Sequence record: MT586120.1
Reading direction: 5' to 3' (one strand)
DNA: 64,000 bases
Shown one piece after another: positions 14,308 through 20,679 of this stretch (positions are counted from its first letter, which is position 1; each line of letters starts with the position of its first letter). The translations under genes were made by a program, and so were the position numbers. The notes beneath the pieces are model-generated. The model worked only from the letters and a program-made list of their open reading frames with translations. It was not told the origin of the DNA and did not search any database.

Positions 14308-15438
14308 GTGGCTTCTTTATCCGGCAACTCTACTAATGGTATCCCAAACTGGGACAAGTATGTAAAAAACCAGAATAGCTTGAGTAGTATTAAGTATGAT
14401 ATCGAAAAGCCAGCCTTTTTATATAAAGGAATTTCAAATACAAAGGAAAGTGATATTTTAGGTCTTCTTCCTGTAGGGACGCTGGTTAATATAGTATCCC
14501 CTACCATATATAATATTAGTGTATCTAAAGGTGCGGGAAAGGCATTCAGTAGTAAGCCAGCAGCTAAAGTTAGATATGATGGAAAATCTGGTTATGTCTT
14601 AATTACATTAATTAGAAAGCCTACAAAGGCTCCTGATTCCGTAGAAAAGAGGACGATTGATATAACACAAACAACTTTAAATTCATACAAGCAAGTTTCT
14701 GGTGTAGGTAGAGGTCCTAAAGCTGGTATTAATATTGAAGTTGAAGGTGTTGGTGTAATACAAAATGTATCTACAGTATCTAAAGTCCCCGAGAGAGTGA
14801 ATAATAGAGAAGCAAAAGCTGATATTGTTTTGAAGGATACGAAAGGTACACCATTATTCTACATATCACACAAGGCGGGTGGTGGTGCCAAGGCTTTCCA
14901 GCAGTATGGTGGTGTATCTAAAAAAGCAGGAAGTAGAAGCAATCCCGCATTGATATATAATGATCCAGAGACACAGCAATATTTGAACGACCTTTGGAAT
15001 TTTTACCAGGATGCCCTAGCAGGAGCACTACAATATGGAGAGGCTAATCCATTTAAGTCAGATGGTCTTCTAAAATACGGTAGGATATACAGGTTTGTAA
15101 AATCAGACGAACTTATTGGTAAGGCAGTATTTGGACCTGATTATGGTGGAGCATTTGGTATTGACAATGTAAACCTAATCGGTCAAGGTAATTTCCTATT
15201 CAAGCCATATATGAATTCCGAGGAAGACATTGCTATTAGACTTAGATTTGAAAACTTTGAAATTAACGGAGATATATCCGAGTTTAGAAAGGGTGACTAT
15301 AGGGCAATCTTTGTATCCAGGTCTTCCTCAGATAGGAAAACTGAAACACCGTCTGGTAATATTCCAAAACTTAGGACTGGTATATTCAATATGTCTTACC
15401 TATCTGGTCAGTCCGAAAACATTGACGCCCTACTCTAA
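14308..15438 (+). CDS. Putative PD-(D/E)xK (restriction-endonuclease-like) nuclease
   Basis: KADIVL...YISHK...FQQYGG motif; AT-rich codon style. Confidence 0.45.
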   Translation: MASLSGNSTNGIPNWDKYVKNQNSLSSIKYDIEKPAFLYKGISNTKESDILGLLPVGTLVNIVSPTIYNISVSKGAGKAFSSKPAAKVRYDGKSGYVLITLIRKPTKAPDSVEKRTIDITQTTLNSYKQVSGVGRGPKAGINIEVEGVGVIQNVSTVSKVPERVNNREAKADIVLKDTKGTPLFYISHKAGGGAKAFQQYGGVSKKAGSRSNPALIYNDPETQQYLNDLWNFYQDALAGALQYGEANPFKSDGLLKYGRIYRFVKSDELIGKAVFGPDYGGAFGIDNVNLIGQGNFLFKPYMNSEEDIAIRLRFENFEINGDISEFRKGDYRAIFVSRSSSDRKTETPSGNIPKLRTGIFNMSYLSGQSENIDALL

Positions 15439-19315: not shown

Positions 19316-19389
19316 GCCTCAGTAGCTCAGTGGAATAGAGCATCGCTCTTCTAAAGCGTGTTGCGCTGGTTCGAATCCAGCCTGAGGCG
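19316..19389 (+). tRNA. tRNA-Arg(TCT)
   Basis: GCCTCAG/CTGAGGC acceptor stem; loop CT-TCT-AA; GCTGG-TTCGAAT-CCAGC T arm. Confidence 0.9.
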
Positions 19390-19415
19390 TCGTCCAATTA
19401 CTAACATATATAACA

Positions 19416-19571
19416 ATGGGATTACTTTCAGAAAGCGATTACACTCACGCAATTCAAGCACTTGAATACTACCTTGAAGTTTGGGGTAGTCAGTTGAGTG
19501 ATGTTGAGTATATGGAAAAGGAAGCTCTTCTCCGTTGGCTCTACATCAGCAAATCAAAACTAAGTAGCTGA
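19416..19571 (+). CDS. Hypothetical 51-aa protein (not in ORF track)
   Basis: MGLLSESDYTHAIQALEYY...KLSS, read manually. Confidence 0.5.
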   Translation: MGLLSESDYTHAIQALEYYLEVWGSQLSDVEYMEKEALLRWLYISKSKLSS

Positions 19572-19629
19572 TTACACAAGACGATCATCCATATTTACGC
19601 TATACTATCCACATACACAACAAAGACAG

Positions 19630-19821
19630 ATGGCTAAGCAACTCCGTATGGATCTCATTGATGAGTATTACAAGCTATACCGTGAGCGGACTCTATGCCG
19701 TCACACCAAAGATTTTAGAGACAACTACGAAAAGATTAGTGAGCTGTGGGTAGATTTTTCAGAAGAAGAGCGTATCGCAATCAATATACGCTTCATCCAA
19801 GACAACTTGAATAAGTTCTAA
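19630..19821 (+). CDS. Hypothetical protein
   Basis: 63-aa ORF between tRNA genes. Confidence 0.55.
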   Translation: MAKQLRMDLIDEYYKLYRERTLCRHTKDFRDNYEKISELWVDFSEEERIAINIRFIQDNLNKF

Positions 19822-19850
19822 TCTTGTGATATAATACGGTCAACAGACCT

Positions 19851-19923
19851 GCTCCTTTAGCTCTCTGGTGAAAGCACTCCGCTCATAACGGAAGAAAGGT
19901 CAGTTCGATCCTGACAAGGAGCA
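19851..19923 (+). tRNA. tRNA with CAT anticodon (elongator Met or Ile2)
   Basis: GCTCCTT/AAGGAGC acceptor stem; loop CT-CAT-AA; lacks the three G-C pairs of initiator tRNA; own promoter TTGAAT-17-TATAAT at 19807-19835. Confidence 0.85.
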
Positions 19924-19964
19924 TTGACAATCATCACCTTCTCTGGTATGATTGTTTCATCTTC

Positions 19965-20037
19965 GGGGAATTAGCTCAGTTGGTAGAGCGCCTGCTTTGC
20001 AAGCAGGATGTCAACGGTTCGAGTCCGTTATTCTCCA
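19965..20037 (+). tRNA. tRNA-Ala(TGC)
   Basis: GGGGAAT/ATTCTCC acceptor with G3:U70; loop TT-TGC-AA. Confidence 0.95.
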
Positions 20038-20077
20038 TTGACAATCATCACCTTCTCTGGTATGATTGTCTCATCTT

Positions 20078-20149
20078 CGGGGTGTAGCGCAGCGGTAGCG
20101 CATCGCTTTTGGGAAGCGAGGGTCGCAGGTTCGATCCCTGCCACCCCGA
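20078..20149 (+). tRNA. tRNA-Pro(TGG)
   Basis: CGGGGTG/CACCCCG acceptor stem; loop TT-TGG-GA. Confidence 0.93.
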
Positions 20150-20187
20150 TTGACAATCATCACCTTCTCTGGTATGATTGTCGCATA

Positions 20188-20314
20188 AGAGAAGCACCTG
20201 TTAGGATGGTGGTCGCCTAGAATTCAAGGTGGCAGAGGCGGATTACCTCCCGTCCGAGACGAAGCGTTTAAGTTAGTCCTTTGGTAAATGGCAGTTCAAA
20301 TCTGCCCTTCTCTT
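20188..20314 (+). ncRNA. tRNA-like RNA with acceptor stem, T arm and expanded interior
   Basis: AGAGAAG/CTTCTCT stem and GGCAG-TTCAAAT-CTGCC T arm enclosing about 95 nt with at least four hairpins; no canonical anticodon loop. Confidence 0.7.
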
Positions 20315-20320
20315 AAAAAT

Positions 20321-20405
20321 GGAGAGGTGGTCGAGTGGTTTATGGCTCTGGTCTTGAAAACCAGCGAGGTGAAAGCCTCCGTGAGTTCAAATCTCACCCT
20401 CTCCG
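20321..20405 (+). tRNA. tRNA-Ser(TGA)
   Basis: GGAGAGG/CCTCTCC acceptor stem; loop CT-TGA-AA; long variable arm. Confidence 0.95.
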
Positions 20406-20409
20406 CTTT

Positions 20410-20482
20410 GCCTTTGTAGCTCAGTTGGTAGAGCGCGGCTTTTGTAAAGCCGATGTCGCAAGTTCAAATCTTGTCGAAGGCT
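20410..20482 (+). tRNA. tRNA-Thr(TGT)
   Basis: GCCTTTG/CGAAGGC acceptor stem; loop TT-TGT-AA. Confidence 0.93.
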
Positions 20483-20512
20483 TCTATGTATATCATATAC
20501 ATAGTTTTGAAT

Positions 20513-20586
20513 GGGGGATTAGTTCAGTGGCAAAACACCCGCCTCCGACGCGGGAGTCATCGGTTCGAGTCCGTTATTCTCCACCA
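20513..20586 (+). tRNA. tRNA with CCG (Arg) anticodon on an Ala-type body; CCA encoded
   Basis: GGGGGAT/ATTCTCC-A-CCA acceptor with G3:U70; CCCGC-CTCCGAC-GCGGG anticodon arm. Confidence 0.8.
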
Positions 20587-20591
20587 ACCAT

Positions 20592-20664
20592 TGCTCTGTA
20601 ATTCAATCGGTAGAATGCCAAGCTGTTAACTTGGAGGTTGCAGGTTCGAGTCCTGCCGGAGCAG
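20592..20664 (+). tRNA. tRNA-Asn(GTT)
   Basis: TGCTCTG/CGGAGCA acceptor stem; loop CT-GTT-AA. Confidence 0.93.
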
Positions 20665-20679
20665 TTTAAACTTAATATT

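What the first reader, a model, noticed from the sequence alone, without database searches (positions are those of the whole stretch)
20513..20586. tRNA with alanine identity elements but an arginine (CCG) anticodon: candidate mistranslating tRNA
Seen: acceptor GGGGGAT/ATTCTCC has G3:U70 and discriminator A73, and the 3' 23 nt (CGGTTCGAGTCCGTTATTCTCCA) are identical to the genuine tRNA-Ala(TGC) at 19965. The perfect 5-bp anticodon stem encloses CT-CCG-AC, which reads CGG. D-loop position 20 reads as C, not A. It is the only tRNA in the cluster with an encoded CCA. Established: AlaRS recognises G3:U70 and ignores the anticodon; bacterial ArgRS depends strongly on A20 plus C35. Inference: this RNA would be charged with Ala and insert it at CGG Arg codons. 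CGG appears uncommon in these phage genes (present, e.g. g44 5867 and regA 7345) and is expected to be more frequent in a GC-richer picocyanobacterial host, so it could selectively damage host proteins. It could instead be a decoy for anticodon nucleases or a decaying tRNA-Ala duplicate (T50:T64 and C13:A22 mismatches, G5:U68).
Basis: partly seen in the sequence, partly recalled or inferred. Interest (0 to 1): 0.85.

Follow-up and report, generated by a model that had tools for sequence, protein, structure and literature searches.

The report
Phage tRNA: alanine identity, arginine anticodon
A marine cyanophage (S-CAM7) carries a real but strain-specific tRNA gene, databased as tRNA-Arg(CCG), that has the alanine charging signals and lacks the key arginine one, so it could put alanine at rare CGG codons, but it looks more like a dispensable product of recombination in an unstable tRNA array than a proven weapon.

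Summary
Window 20513-20583 (+CCA) is a tRNA (ARAGORN; Rfam 57 bits) with anticodon CCG, acceptor GGGGGAT/ATTCTCC (G2:C71, G3:U70, G4:C69, A73), C20 instead of the arginine determinant A20, and a 3' 23 nt identical to the neighbouring tRNA-Ala(TGC).

The window is Synechococcus phage S-CAM7 isolate 0809CC03, where the gene is annotated tRNA-Arg(ccg). Isotype profiles place it with Ala/Gly and not Arg. G3:U70 occurs in 19/19 viral Ala tRNAs and at most 2/433 others. CGG is nearly the rarest phage codon (1.2 per 1000), against about 17 per 1000 in GC-rich Synechococcus-type DNA.

No homologue exists outside two S-CAM7 isolates. A third isolate lacks exactly the 546 nt between the two 23-nt repeats. 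A preprint reports laboratory-coevolved S-CAM7 losing 3-4 adjacent tRNA genes. Other tRNAs of the array are intragenic mosaics. The cloverleaf is weak (-14.6 kcal/mol).

Best reading: a mosaic Ala-scaffold tRNA made by recombination, probably an AlaRS substrate and a low-level Arg(CGG)->Ala mistranslator, dispensable and not shown to be adaptive. Charging and expression are untested.

The parts
20513..20583 (+). tRNA body (71 nt), annotated tRNA-Arg(ccg) in GenBank MT586120. Acceptor 20513-20519/20576-20582, D arm 20522-20536, anticodon arm 20538-20554, variable loop 20555-20558 (4 nt), T arm 20559-20575, discriminator A 20583.
   Evidence: ARAGORN; Rfam tRNA 57.2 bits; annotation
20545..20547 (+). 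Anticodon CCG (reads CGG), in loop CTCCGAC with U33 and A37
20515..20515 (+). G3, which pairs with U70 at 20580. This is the major AlaRS determinant. It is flanked by G2:C71 and G4:C69, with A73 at 20583.
   Evidence: sequence; identity set from PMC9976931; 19/19 Ala versus at most 2/433 non-Ala viral tRNAs carry it
20531..20531 (+). Position 20 is C. The arginine determinant A20 is absent.
   Evidence: A20 in 24/26 viral Arg tRNAs; the phage's own tRNA-Arg(UCU) at 19316-19389 has A20
20561..20586 (+). 3' 23 nt identical to tRNA-Ala(TGC), plus encoded CCA. This is the right-hand copy of the direct repeat.
   Evidence: Cyanophage Ala genes followed by CCA are seen in L003, L027 and L039.
20015..20037 (+). 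Left-hand copy of the 23-nt repeat, the 3' end of the genuine tRNA-Ala(TGC) at 19965-20037
   Evidence: Isolate 0910CC49 lacks exactly the 546 nt between the repeats.
20150..20178 (+). Nearest upstream sigma70-like promoter (TTGACA-17-TATGAT), third copy of a repeated promoter cassette. It probably drives X-Ser-Thr-CCG-Asn.
   Evidence: consensus match only; co-transcription is inferred
20484..20504 (+). AT-only hairpin CTATGTATAT-C-ATATACATAG followed by TTTT, in the 30-nt spacer just upstream of the tRNA. It is a possible processing site or weak terminator, and it is found only in the two isolates that carry the tRNA.
20592..20664 (+). tRNA-Asn(GTT), 8 nt downstream. It shows a compensated stem change between isolates, so it is under selection, and it must be released from the same precursor.

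Best explanation
This is a genuine tRNA gene found only in some S-CAM7 isolates. Its scaffold belongs to the marine-phage Ala/Gly tRNA family, its acceptor helix and 3' end are those of a tRNA-Ala, and its anticodon is CCG. It is not an arginine-type tRNA; the database name follows the anticodon only. It most likely arose by patchwise recombination or gene conversion inside a recombination-prone tRNA array.

Proposed working, all of it inferred:
- It is co-transcribed from the promoter at 20150 with X, Ser, Thr and Asn, and cut out by the host tRNA-processing enzymes.
- Host AlaRS reads only the acceptor end and charges it with alanine. ArgRS charges it poorly or not at all, because A20 is missing.
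- At the ribosome it competes with host tRNA-Arg(CCG) for CGG codons, giving low-level Arg->Ala substitution.
- This touches few phage codons (24 in 19,462) and many more host codons.
- It is dispensable and probably neutral to mildly costly, a by-product and not a selected weapon.
For: The gene is real.

Identity elements: G2:C71, G3:U70, G4:C69 and A73 are present and A20 is absent (identity sets). G3:U70 marks 19/19 viral Ala tRNAs and at most 2/433 others. A20 is in 24/26 viral Arg tRNAs.

Isotype models: in isotype HMMs, the seven neighbouring tRNAs are each classed correctly. The CCG tRNA scores Ala 50.1, Gly 44.9 and Arg 27.0 with the anticodon masked. In covariance models it scores Ala 60.1 versus Arg 47.0, and ranks 6th of 8 on the Arg model.

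Scaffold: the whole acceptor helix GGGGGAT/ATTCTCC, the short D arm and the 4-nt variable loop recur in 41 IMG/VR tRNA-Ala(TGC) genes.

Recombination:
- The 3' 23 nt are identical to the neighbouring Ala gene, while the other 48 nt differ from it at 14 bases plus two single-base gaps (about 68% identity).
- Isolate 0910CC49 lacks exactly the 546-nt repeat-to-repeat interval.
- tRNA-Arg(UCU) alleles in the same array are intragenic mosaics with an S-SKS1-like T arm.
- The Pro cassette is an indel between promoter repeats.

Dispensability: the tRNA is absent in one natural isolate, and coevolved S-CAM7 lost 3-4 adjacent tRNA genes (bioRxiv 10.64898/2026.10.08.757702).

Not codon compensation: CGG is 1.23 per 1000 codons and tied second-rarest in the phage, versus 16.7 per 1000 in four GC-rich Synechococcus-type loci. 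GC-rich Synechococcus carry the full tRNA repertoire, in which CCG is not listed as absent (PMC3152331).
Against: - There are no expression, processing or charging data.
- The cloverleaf is only -14.6 kcal/mol, against -22 to -31 for the neighbours, and it is not the minimum-energy fold. The U50:U64 mismatch lies in the T-stem region that, from general knowledge, tunes EF-Tu binding. The RNA may therefore be unstable or poorly delivered.
- C35, G36 and A73 are arginine determinants, so some ArgRS charging cannot be excluded.
- On the Ala covariance model it scores no better than Thr or Pro do. Only the acceptor/T end is Ala-specific.
- Two compensated stem pairs (11:24 and 29:41, relative to the neighbouring Ala) and intact universal nucleotides are compatible with a longer functional history and a selected role that cannot be seen with only two identical copies.
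- The hosts used for codon counts are proxies, not WH7803.
Confidence: 0.5

Rival explanations
1. Inert recombination scar or pseudo-tRNA. The gene is transcribed only as a passenger of the operon. The RNA misfolds, is degraded or is not aminoacylated, and it has no effect on translation.
For: It has the weakest cloverleaf of the array and this is not the minimum-energy fold (z = +0.78). It carries C13:A22 and U50:U64 mismatches. It is an orphan, with no relatives in phage records, IMG/VR, JGI metagenomes or GTDB genomes. It is lost in one isolate, and tRNA loss is reported in laboratory lines.
Against: It scores 57 bits on the general tRNA model, above the array's Ser (54) and Met (48). All universal tertiary nucleotides are intact (U8, A14, G15:C48, G18G19, A21, U33, T54-C56, A58). 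The acceptor helix and weak D stem are the same as in 41 natural Ala tRNAs. A U50:U64 mismatch also occurs in two IMG/VR Trp tRNAs. The anticodon stem is a perfect 5 bp.
Confidence: 0.25
2. A working tRNA-Arg(CCG), as annotated. It is charged by ArgRS through C35, G36 and A73, and it supplies or replaces CGG decoding, for example if the host lowers its own tRNA-Arg(CCG) as a passive resistance.
For: The anticodon determinants C35 and G36 and the discriminator A73 fit arginine identity. Host tRNA shortage is a documented resistance route in marine Synechococcus, shown for Leu-TAA (PMC11726456).
Against: It has no A20. G3:U70 is present. Its Arg-model score is lower than those of four non-Arg neighbours. 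CGG is the second-rarest phage codon, so there is little to gain. Other cyanophage Arg tRNAs in the sample are UCU, ACG or UCG, never CCG.
Confidence: 0.12
3. Selected, codon-targeted mistranslator. Ala-tRNA(CCG) is made to corrupt CGG-rich host proteins newly made during infection, possibly defence proteins, while sparing the CGG-poor phage proteome.
For: The Ala identity set is combined with a CCG anticodon. The phage/host CGG contrast is about 14-fold. In yeast, Arg->Ala was the substitution class whose growth impact rose most steeply with the amount of mistranslation (10.1101/2022.11.23.517754). Two stem pairs are compensated and the anticodon stem is perfect.
Against: There is no conservation beyond two identical copies. 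It is lost naturally, and tRNA loss is reported in the laboratory. Essential phage genes contain CGG: DNA polymerase twice, gp44, regA and RNR beta. CGG rarity matches all G-ending codons (2-6%), so there is no specific purge. No partner enzyme lies nearby.
Confidence: 0.12
4. Decoy or bait for a host tRNA-targeting nuclease, or another non-translational tRNA-like role.
For: Phage tRNAs with altered anticodon loops have been proposed to counter anticodon nucleases (PMC10264068). Five of the 7 loop bases differ from the Ala relative while the stem is kept.
Against: No nuclease that targets tRNA-Arg(CCG) is known in these hosts. The published cases keep the cognate anticodon and identity. Nothing here tests this idea.
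Confidence: 0.05

Closest known systems
tRNA-Ala anticodon variants that mistranslate (engineered in yeast, natural in humans; 10.1101/2022.11.23.517754, PMC12084884)
   Same: An Ala acceptor identity (G3:U70) is combined with a non-Ala anticodon. Because AlaRS ignores the anticodon, Ala is inserted at the codon read by the new anticodon. Variants with C34 mistranslated only G-ending codons.
   Different: Those are point mutants of otherwise normal tRNA-Ala genes in eukaryotes, and misincorporation was measured. This one is phage-encoded, is only about 68-78% identical to any Ala tRNA outside its 3' end, is a mosaic, and is untested.
tRNAProX family (tRNAProA/T/N) of Streptomyces and other bacteria (PMC10404621)
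   Same: A naturally encoded bacterial-type tRNA with the identity of one amino acid and the anticodon of another, annotated by anticodon and therefore misnamed in databases.
   Different: tRNAProX is conserved across genomes and tRNAProA is encoded with a dedicated ProRSx. Here there is no conservation and no partner enzyme. The amino-acid pair also differs (Ala identity with an Arg anticodon).
Marine-phage tRNA-Ala(TGC) genes: the neighbouring gene at 19965-20037, and the short-D-loop form in IMG/VR (e.g. L028 3552-3623, L042 7944-8015)
   Same: It shares an identical 3' 23 nt with the former. With the latter it shares an identical acceptor helix (including G5:U68), a 7-nt D loop, the AAAC D-stem strand and a 4-nt variable loop.
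   Different: The anticodon is CCG, not TGC. Five of 7 loop bases differ. It has C13:A22 and U50:U64 mismatches.
Codon-compensating cyanomyovirus tRNAs (PMC3152331)
   Same: It sits in the same kind of array in a T4-like cyanophage.
   Different: Those mostly have T-starting anticodons for AT-rich codons that are frequent in the phage and rare in the host. This one reads a GC-rich codon that is rare in the phage and common in the host.

Membership tests
tRNA (Rfam RF00005) | Cloverleaf with conserved core nucleotides, scoring above the family threshold | tested here: met
   57.2 bits against a gathering score of 29; ARAGORN call
Bacterial-type tRNA-Arg (ArgRS substrate) | A20 in the D loop (main determinant) | tested here: not met
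   Position 20 is C. A20 is in 24/26 viral Arg tRNAs. Determinant taken from PMC9976931.
Bacterial-type tRNA-Arg (ArgRS substrate) | C35, G/U36 and A/G73 | tested here: met
   Anticodon CCG and discriminator A
Bacterial-type tRNA-Arg (ArgRS substrate) | Overall resemblance to Arg tRNAs (isotype model) | tested here: not met
   Arg HMM 26-27 bits, against 41-50 for Ala. Arg covariance model 47.0 bits, 6th of 8, below Asn, Ala, Thr and Pro.
Bacterial-type tRNA-Ala (AlaRS substrate) | G3:U70 wobble pair | tested here: met
   G 20515 / T 20580. It is specific: 19/19 Ala versus at most 2/433 non-Ala tRNAs.
Bacterial-type tRNA-Ala (AlaRS substrate) | A73, G2:C71, G4:C69 | tested here: met
   Sequence; identity set
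Bacterial-type tRNA-Ala (AlaRS substrate) | G20 (minor element) | tested here: not met
   C20 here. However, 16/18 viral Ala tRNAs in the sample have U20, so G20 is not kept in this group either.
Bacterial-type tRNA-Ala (AlaRS substrate) | Actual aminoacylation with alanine | not testable with these tools
   Needs an enzyme assay or charged-tRNA sequencing
Bacterial-type tRNA-Gly | U73, C2:G71, G3:C70, C35, C36 | tested here: not met
   It has A73, G2:C71, G3:U70 and G36; only C35 fits, despite a Gly-like D arm and T-stem strand.
Naturally encoded dual-identity (mistranslating) tRNAs | Identity elements of one amino acid with the anticodon of another | tested here: met
   Ala set plus CCG anticodon
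Naturally encoded dual-identity (mistranslating) tRNAs | Measured misincorporation, and conservation of the gene | tested here: inconclusive
   Misincorporation is not testable here. For conservation, only two identical copies were found in S-CAM7 isolates and none elsewhere.
Codon-compensating phage tRNA | Reads a codon more used by the phage than by the host | tested here: not met
   CGG is 1.23 per 1000 in the phage and 16.7 per 1000 in proxy hosts.

The most novel reading that the evidence does not exclude
A phage-encoded, codon-selective mistranslator. Alanyl-tRNA(CCG) is made during infection to replace arginine by alanine at CGG codons. These codons are about 14 times more frequent in GC-rich Synechococcus-type genes than in phage genes, so host proteins made after infection (for example induced defences) are crippled while the phage proteome is largely spared.
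Probability: 0.12. Interest if true: 0.9.

Novelty: new variant of a known kind. Interest (0 to 1): 0.55.

Why it matters
If the RNA is charged with alanine, it would, as far as the searches here show, be the first phage-encoded sense-codon mistranslator. It would also be a natural bacterial-world counterpart of the human and engineered tRNA-Ala anticodon variants. That would open the idea that viruses exploit codon-usage differences to mistranslate host proteins selectively.

If it is only a by-product, two things still matter:
- Anticodon-based annotation ('tRNA-Arg') misnames identity-conflicted tRNAs, so codon-compensation analyses that count phage tRNAs by anticodon inherit such errors.
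- Cyanophage tRNA arrays evolve by intragenic recombination that can create tRNAs with conflicting identity. This is a route both to new isoacceptors and to potentially toxic ones, and it may explain why parts of the array are lost quickly.

Tried and rejected
Searches for homologues that found nothing useful:
- BLAST of the 5' 53 nt against 50,697 phage records gave only the two S-CAM7 copies. The next best hits were cyanophage tRNA-Gly at about 78%.
- IMG/VR exact or degenerate patterns for the anticodon arm plus T arm and for the D arm gave 0 hits.
- The bare anticodon arm gave 12 hits, none of them a tRNA.
- The JGI metagenome scan gave one chance hit in a coding region.
- The GTDB genome scan for the anticodon arm followed by a T loop gave 0 hits, so no cellular donor of the arm was found.
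- One IMG/VR scan was wasted on a miscounted gap.
- Fetching relatives through the downstream 2OG-Fe(II) oxygenase gave 4 loci, none with a usable upstream array.

Host data: a PstS-based genome scan returned only four Synechococcus-type loci. These served as codon-usage proxies. No host tRNA-Arg(CCG) and no WH7803 DNA was obtained.

Hypothesis revised: I first read the gene as a simple Gly(5')/Ala(3') chimera joined in the T loop. I dropped this as the sole account for three reasons. IMG/VR Ala(TGC) genes have the same acceptor helix, D arm and variable loop. The same 5' third also occurs in Trp(CCA) tRNAs. The nearest neighbours of all three isotypes tie at about 75% identity. The U50:U64 mismatch can be either a junction or a point mutation.

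Weak tests: the covariance isotype models were built from few sequences and discriminate weakly, since Thr and Pro score like the CCG tRNA on the Ala model. The Gly HMM set is biased, because its loci were fetched with a pattern taken from this tRNA.

Missing source: the preprint's supplementary Table S5, which would name the tRNAs lost, is not held.

Full report
WHAT IS THERE.

The window is 100% identical to Synechococcus phage S-CAM7 isolate 0809CC03 (MT586120.1; Kyanoviridae, Mazuvirus; host WH7803). Window position equals record position minus 124,000.

Positions 19316-20665 hold eight tRNA genes on the + strand. All eight are confirmed by the Rfam tRNA model.

The finding is the seventh gene, at 20513-20583 with CCA at 20584-20586. 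GenBank annotates it as tRNA-Arg(ccg). Its parse is:

GGGGGAT TA GTTC AGTGGCA AAAC A CCCGC CTCCGAC GCGGG AGTC ATCGG TTCGAGT CCGTT ATTCTCC A CCA

- G3:U70, G5:U68 and A73.
- C at position 20.
- A perfect anticodon stem around CU-CCG-AC.
- C13:A22 and U50:U64 mismatches.
- The only encoded CCA in the array.
- A 3' 23 nt identical to tRNA-Ala(TGC) at 19965-20037.

IDENTITY AUDIT.

The published bacterial identity sets (PMC9976931) are:
- Ala: A73, G2:C71, G3:U70, G4:C69 (and G20).
- Arg: A20 as the main determinant, plus C35, U/G36 and A/G73.
- Gly: U73, C2:G71, G3:C70, C35, C36.

This tRNA has the whole acceptor-end Ala set. It has three of the Arg elements but lacks A20. It fails Gly.

- G3:U70 occurs in 19/19 distinct Ala tRNAs and at most 2/433 non-Ala tRNAs.
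- A20 occurs in 24/26 Arg tRNAs.
- The phage's own tRNA-Arg(UCU) at 19316 has A20.

As a stand-in for tRNAscan-SE isotype models, I built isotype HMMs from by-catch viral tRNAs, leaving out S-CAM7.
- They classify all seven neighbours correctly.
- They give the CCG tRNA Gly 43.3, Ala 41.2 and Arg 26.0.
- With the anticodon masked they give Ala 50.1, Gly 44.9 and Arg 27.0.
- The Gly set is biased by the way its loci were fetched.

Covariance models give Ala 60.1 against Arg 47.0.
- On the Arg model it ranks below Asn, Ala, Thr and Pro.
- On the Ala model it scores only like Thr and Pro, far below the true Ala at 99.

So it is clearly not an Arg-type tRNA. Its Ala character is concentrated where AlaRS looks, in the acceptor/T end.

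RELATIVES AND ORIGIN.

No homologue exists outside S-CAM7.
- Only isolates 0809CC03 and 0910SB42 carry it, and their copies are identical.
- Phage GenBank records, IMG/VR, JGI metagenomes and GTDB genomes gave nothing.
- CCG is absent from the other 846 viral tRNAs examined.

Its parts have different nearest relatives:
- The 3' 23 nt plus CCA match the S-CAM7/S-SKS1 tRNA-Ala. Cyanophage Ala genes are often followed by CCA.
- The acceptor helix, the short D arm and the 4-nt variable loop match a short-D-loop tRNA-Ala(TGC) found 41 times in IMG/VR. The same 5' third also occurs in two Trp(CCA) tRNAs.
- The T-stem 5' strand ATCGG matches cyanophage Gly(UCC) and one Ala that pair it with CCGAT.
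- The anticodon stem is the neighbouring Ala's stem with one compensated pair (29:41 U:A to C:G), yet 5 of the 7 loop bases differ.

Whole-length identities to Ala, Gly and Trp relatives tie at about 75%. I conclude that the gene is a mosaic.

The array demonstrably evolves this way:
- The tRNA-Arg(UCU) gene has three alleles among S-CAM7 isolates. One combines the S-CAM7 acceptor and D arm with an S-SKS1-like T arm.
- A promoter-plus-Pro cassette is an indel between 40-nt promoter repeats.
- Isolate 0910CC49 lacks exactly 546 nt, which is the distance between the two 23-nt repeats. This leaves tRNA-Ala followed by CCAACCATT and tRNA-Asn.

A 2026 preprint reports that coevolved S-CAM7 lines lost '3 to 4 adjacent tRNA genes'. 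That number is what repeat-mediated deletion predicts for the array without Pro (3) and the array with Pro (4). This is my inference, because the table naming the genes is not held.

CODONS.

In the 84 annotated CDS of the window, CGG occurs 24 times in 19,462 codons.
- That is 1.23 per 1000 and 3.0% of Arg codons, tied for second-rarest sense codon.
- It occurs in DNA polymerase (twice), gp44, regA and RNR beta.
- The rarity matches all G-ending codons (2-6% of their boxes), so there is no sign of a specific purge.

In four GC-rich (57-64% GC) Synechococcus-type genome loci, used as host proxies, CGG is 16.7 per 1000 and 24.5% of Arg codons.

Cyanomyovirus tRNAs normally have T-starting anticodons for AT-rich codons. 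GC-rich Synechococcus carry the full cyanobacterial tRNA repertoire, in which CCG is not among the anticodons listed as missing (PMC3152331). Codon compensation therefore does not explain this gene.

STRUCTURE AND EXPRESSION CONTEXT.

The canonical cloverleaf is worth -14.6 kcal/mol, against -22 to -31 for its neighbours and for a Gly relative. It is not the minimum-energy fold.

Even so, the universal core nucleotides are intact, and the weak D stem and G:U-rich acceptor are shared with many natural Ala tRNAs.

Five strong sigma70-like promoters precede earlier members of the array, and none lies directly upstream of this gene. It would be read from the promoter at 20150 through X, Ser and Thr.

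An AT-only hairpin followed by TTTT sits in the 30-nt spacer before the tRNA. tRNA-Asn lies 8 nt downstream and shows a compensated stem change between isolates, so it is functional. Transcription therefore probably passes through the CCG gene.

No synthetase or tRNA enzyme is encoded next to the array.

MECHANISM AND RIVALS.

Most likely (confidence 0.5): a mosaic, Ala-identity tRNA produced by recombination.
- It is processed and charged by host AlaRS.
- It competes with host tRNA-Arg(CCG) at CGG codons.
- It causes low-level Arg->Ala substitution that barely touches the phage.
- It is dispensable and not demonstrably selected.

Every step after 'the gene exists and has these determinants' is inference.

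Rivals:
- An inert scar (0.25).
- A real Arg tRNA (0.12).
- A selected host-directed mistranslator (0.12).
- A nuclease decoy (0.05).

COMPARISON WITH WHAT IS KNOWN.

It works like the tRNA-Ala anticodon variants shown to mistranslate in yeast and human cells (PMC12084884). It is also analogous to the bacterial tRNAProX family.

It differs from both in being phage-encoded, mosaic, unconserved and without a partner enzyme. I found no paper describing an identity-conflicted tRNA in a phage.

VERDICT.

This is a new variant of a known kind. It is moderately interesting and cheaply testable by aminoacylation assays and by comparing natural isolates with and without the gene.

Noticed in passing
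window 20188-20317 (+), with promoter 20150-20178: A tRNA-like element of about 130 nt with its own strong promoter. It starts AGAGAAG and ends with a T arm (GGCAG TTCAAAT CTGCC) and CTTCTCT. Default ARAGORN does not call it and Rfam finds nothing at E<=1. Relaxed ARAGORN proposes a weak 'tRNA-Leu(taa) with 47-nt intron'. It is 97% identical, promoter included, to phage S-SKS1, which belongs to a different genus (L004:2688-2862).
   Followed up: partly
window 19316-19389 (+): ARAGORN and GenBank MT586120 call this gene tRNA-Pyl(cta), an apparent amber suppressor. That is a register error. The Rfam alignment gives loop CUUCUAA, which is tRNA-Arg(UCU) with A20 and a U27:U43 mismatch, and the other isolates annotate it Arg-TCT. 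The gene has three alleles among S-CAM7 isolates, one with an S-SKS1-like T arm (intragenic mosaic).
   Followed up: yes
window 19924-19964, 20038-20076, 20150-20190 (+): Three copies of a promoter cassette of about 40 nt (TTGACAATCATCACCTTCTCTGGTATGATTGT...) precede Ala, Pro and element X. Isolate 0910SB42 lacks exactly one cassette plus tRNA-Pro, so the array appears to be built from promoter-tRNA modules that recombine.
   Followed up: partly
window 20484-20508 (+): A hairpin of 10 A-T pairs around a single C (CTATGTATAT-C-ATATACATAG), followed by TTTT, between tRNA-Thr and the CCG tRNA (z = -3.0). It is found only in the two isolates that carry the CCG tRNA. It may be a processing site, a weak terminator or a recombination scar.
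   Followed up: partly
window 20622 and 20630 (tRNA-Asn anticodon stem): There is a compensated pair change between isolates (G..C in 0809CC03, A..T in 0910SB42 and 0910CC49). This shows that tRNA-Asn is under structural selection.
   Followed up: no
L144:6870-6943 and L176:4769-4842 (IMG/VR contigs): Two tRNA-Trp(CCA) genes share the 5' 24 nt of the Ala scaffold. The L144 copy has G1:U72 and G3:U70 with G73, which makes it another possible identity-conflicted viral tRNA. Both contigs also carry a CTA (amber-reading) tRNA, and every tRNA in them has an encoded CCA.
   Followed up: no
window 14308-15438 (+): This CDS is annotated as a CviJI-like type II restriction enzyme in a cyanophage genome. 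I did not examine it.
   Followed up: no
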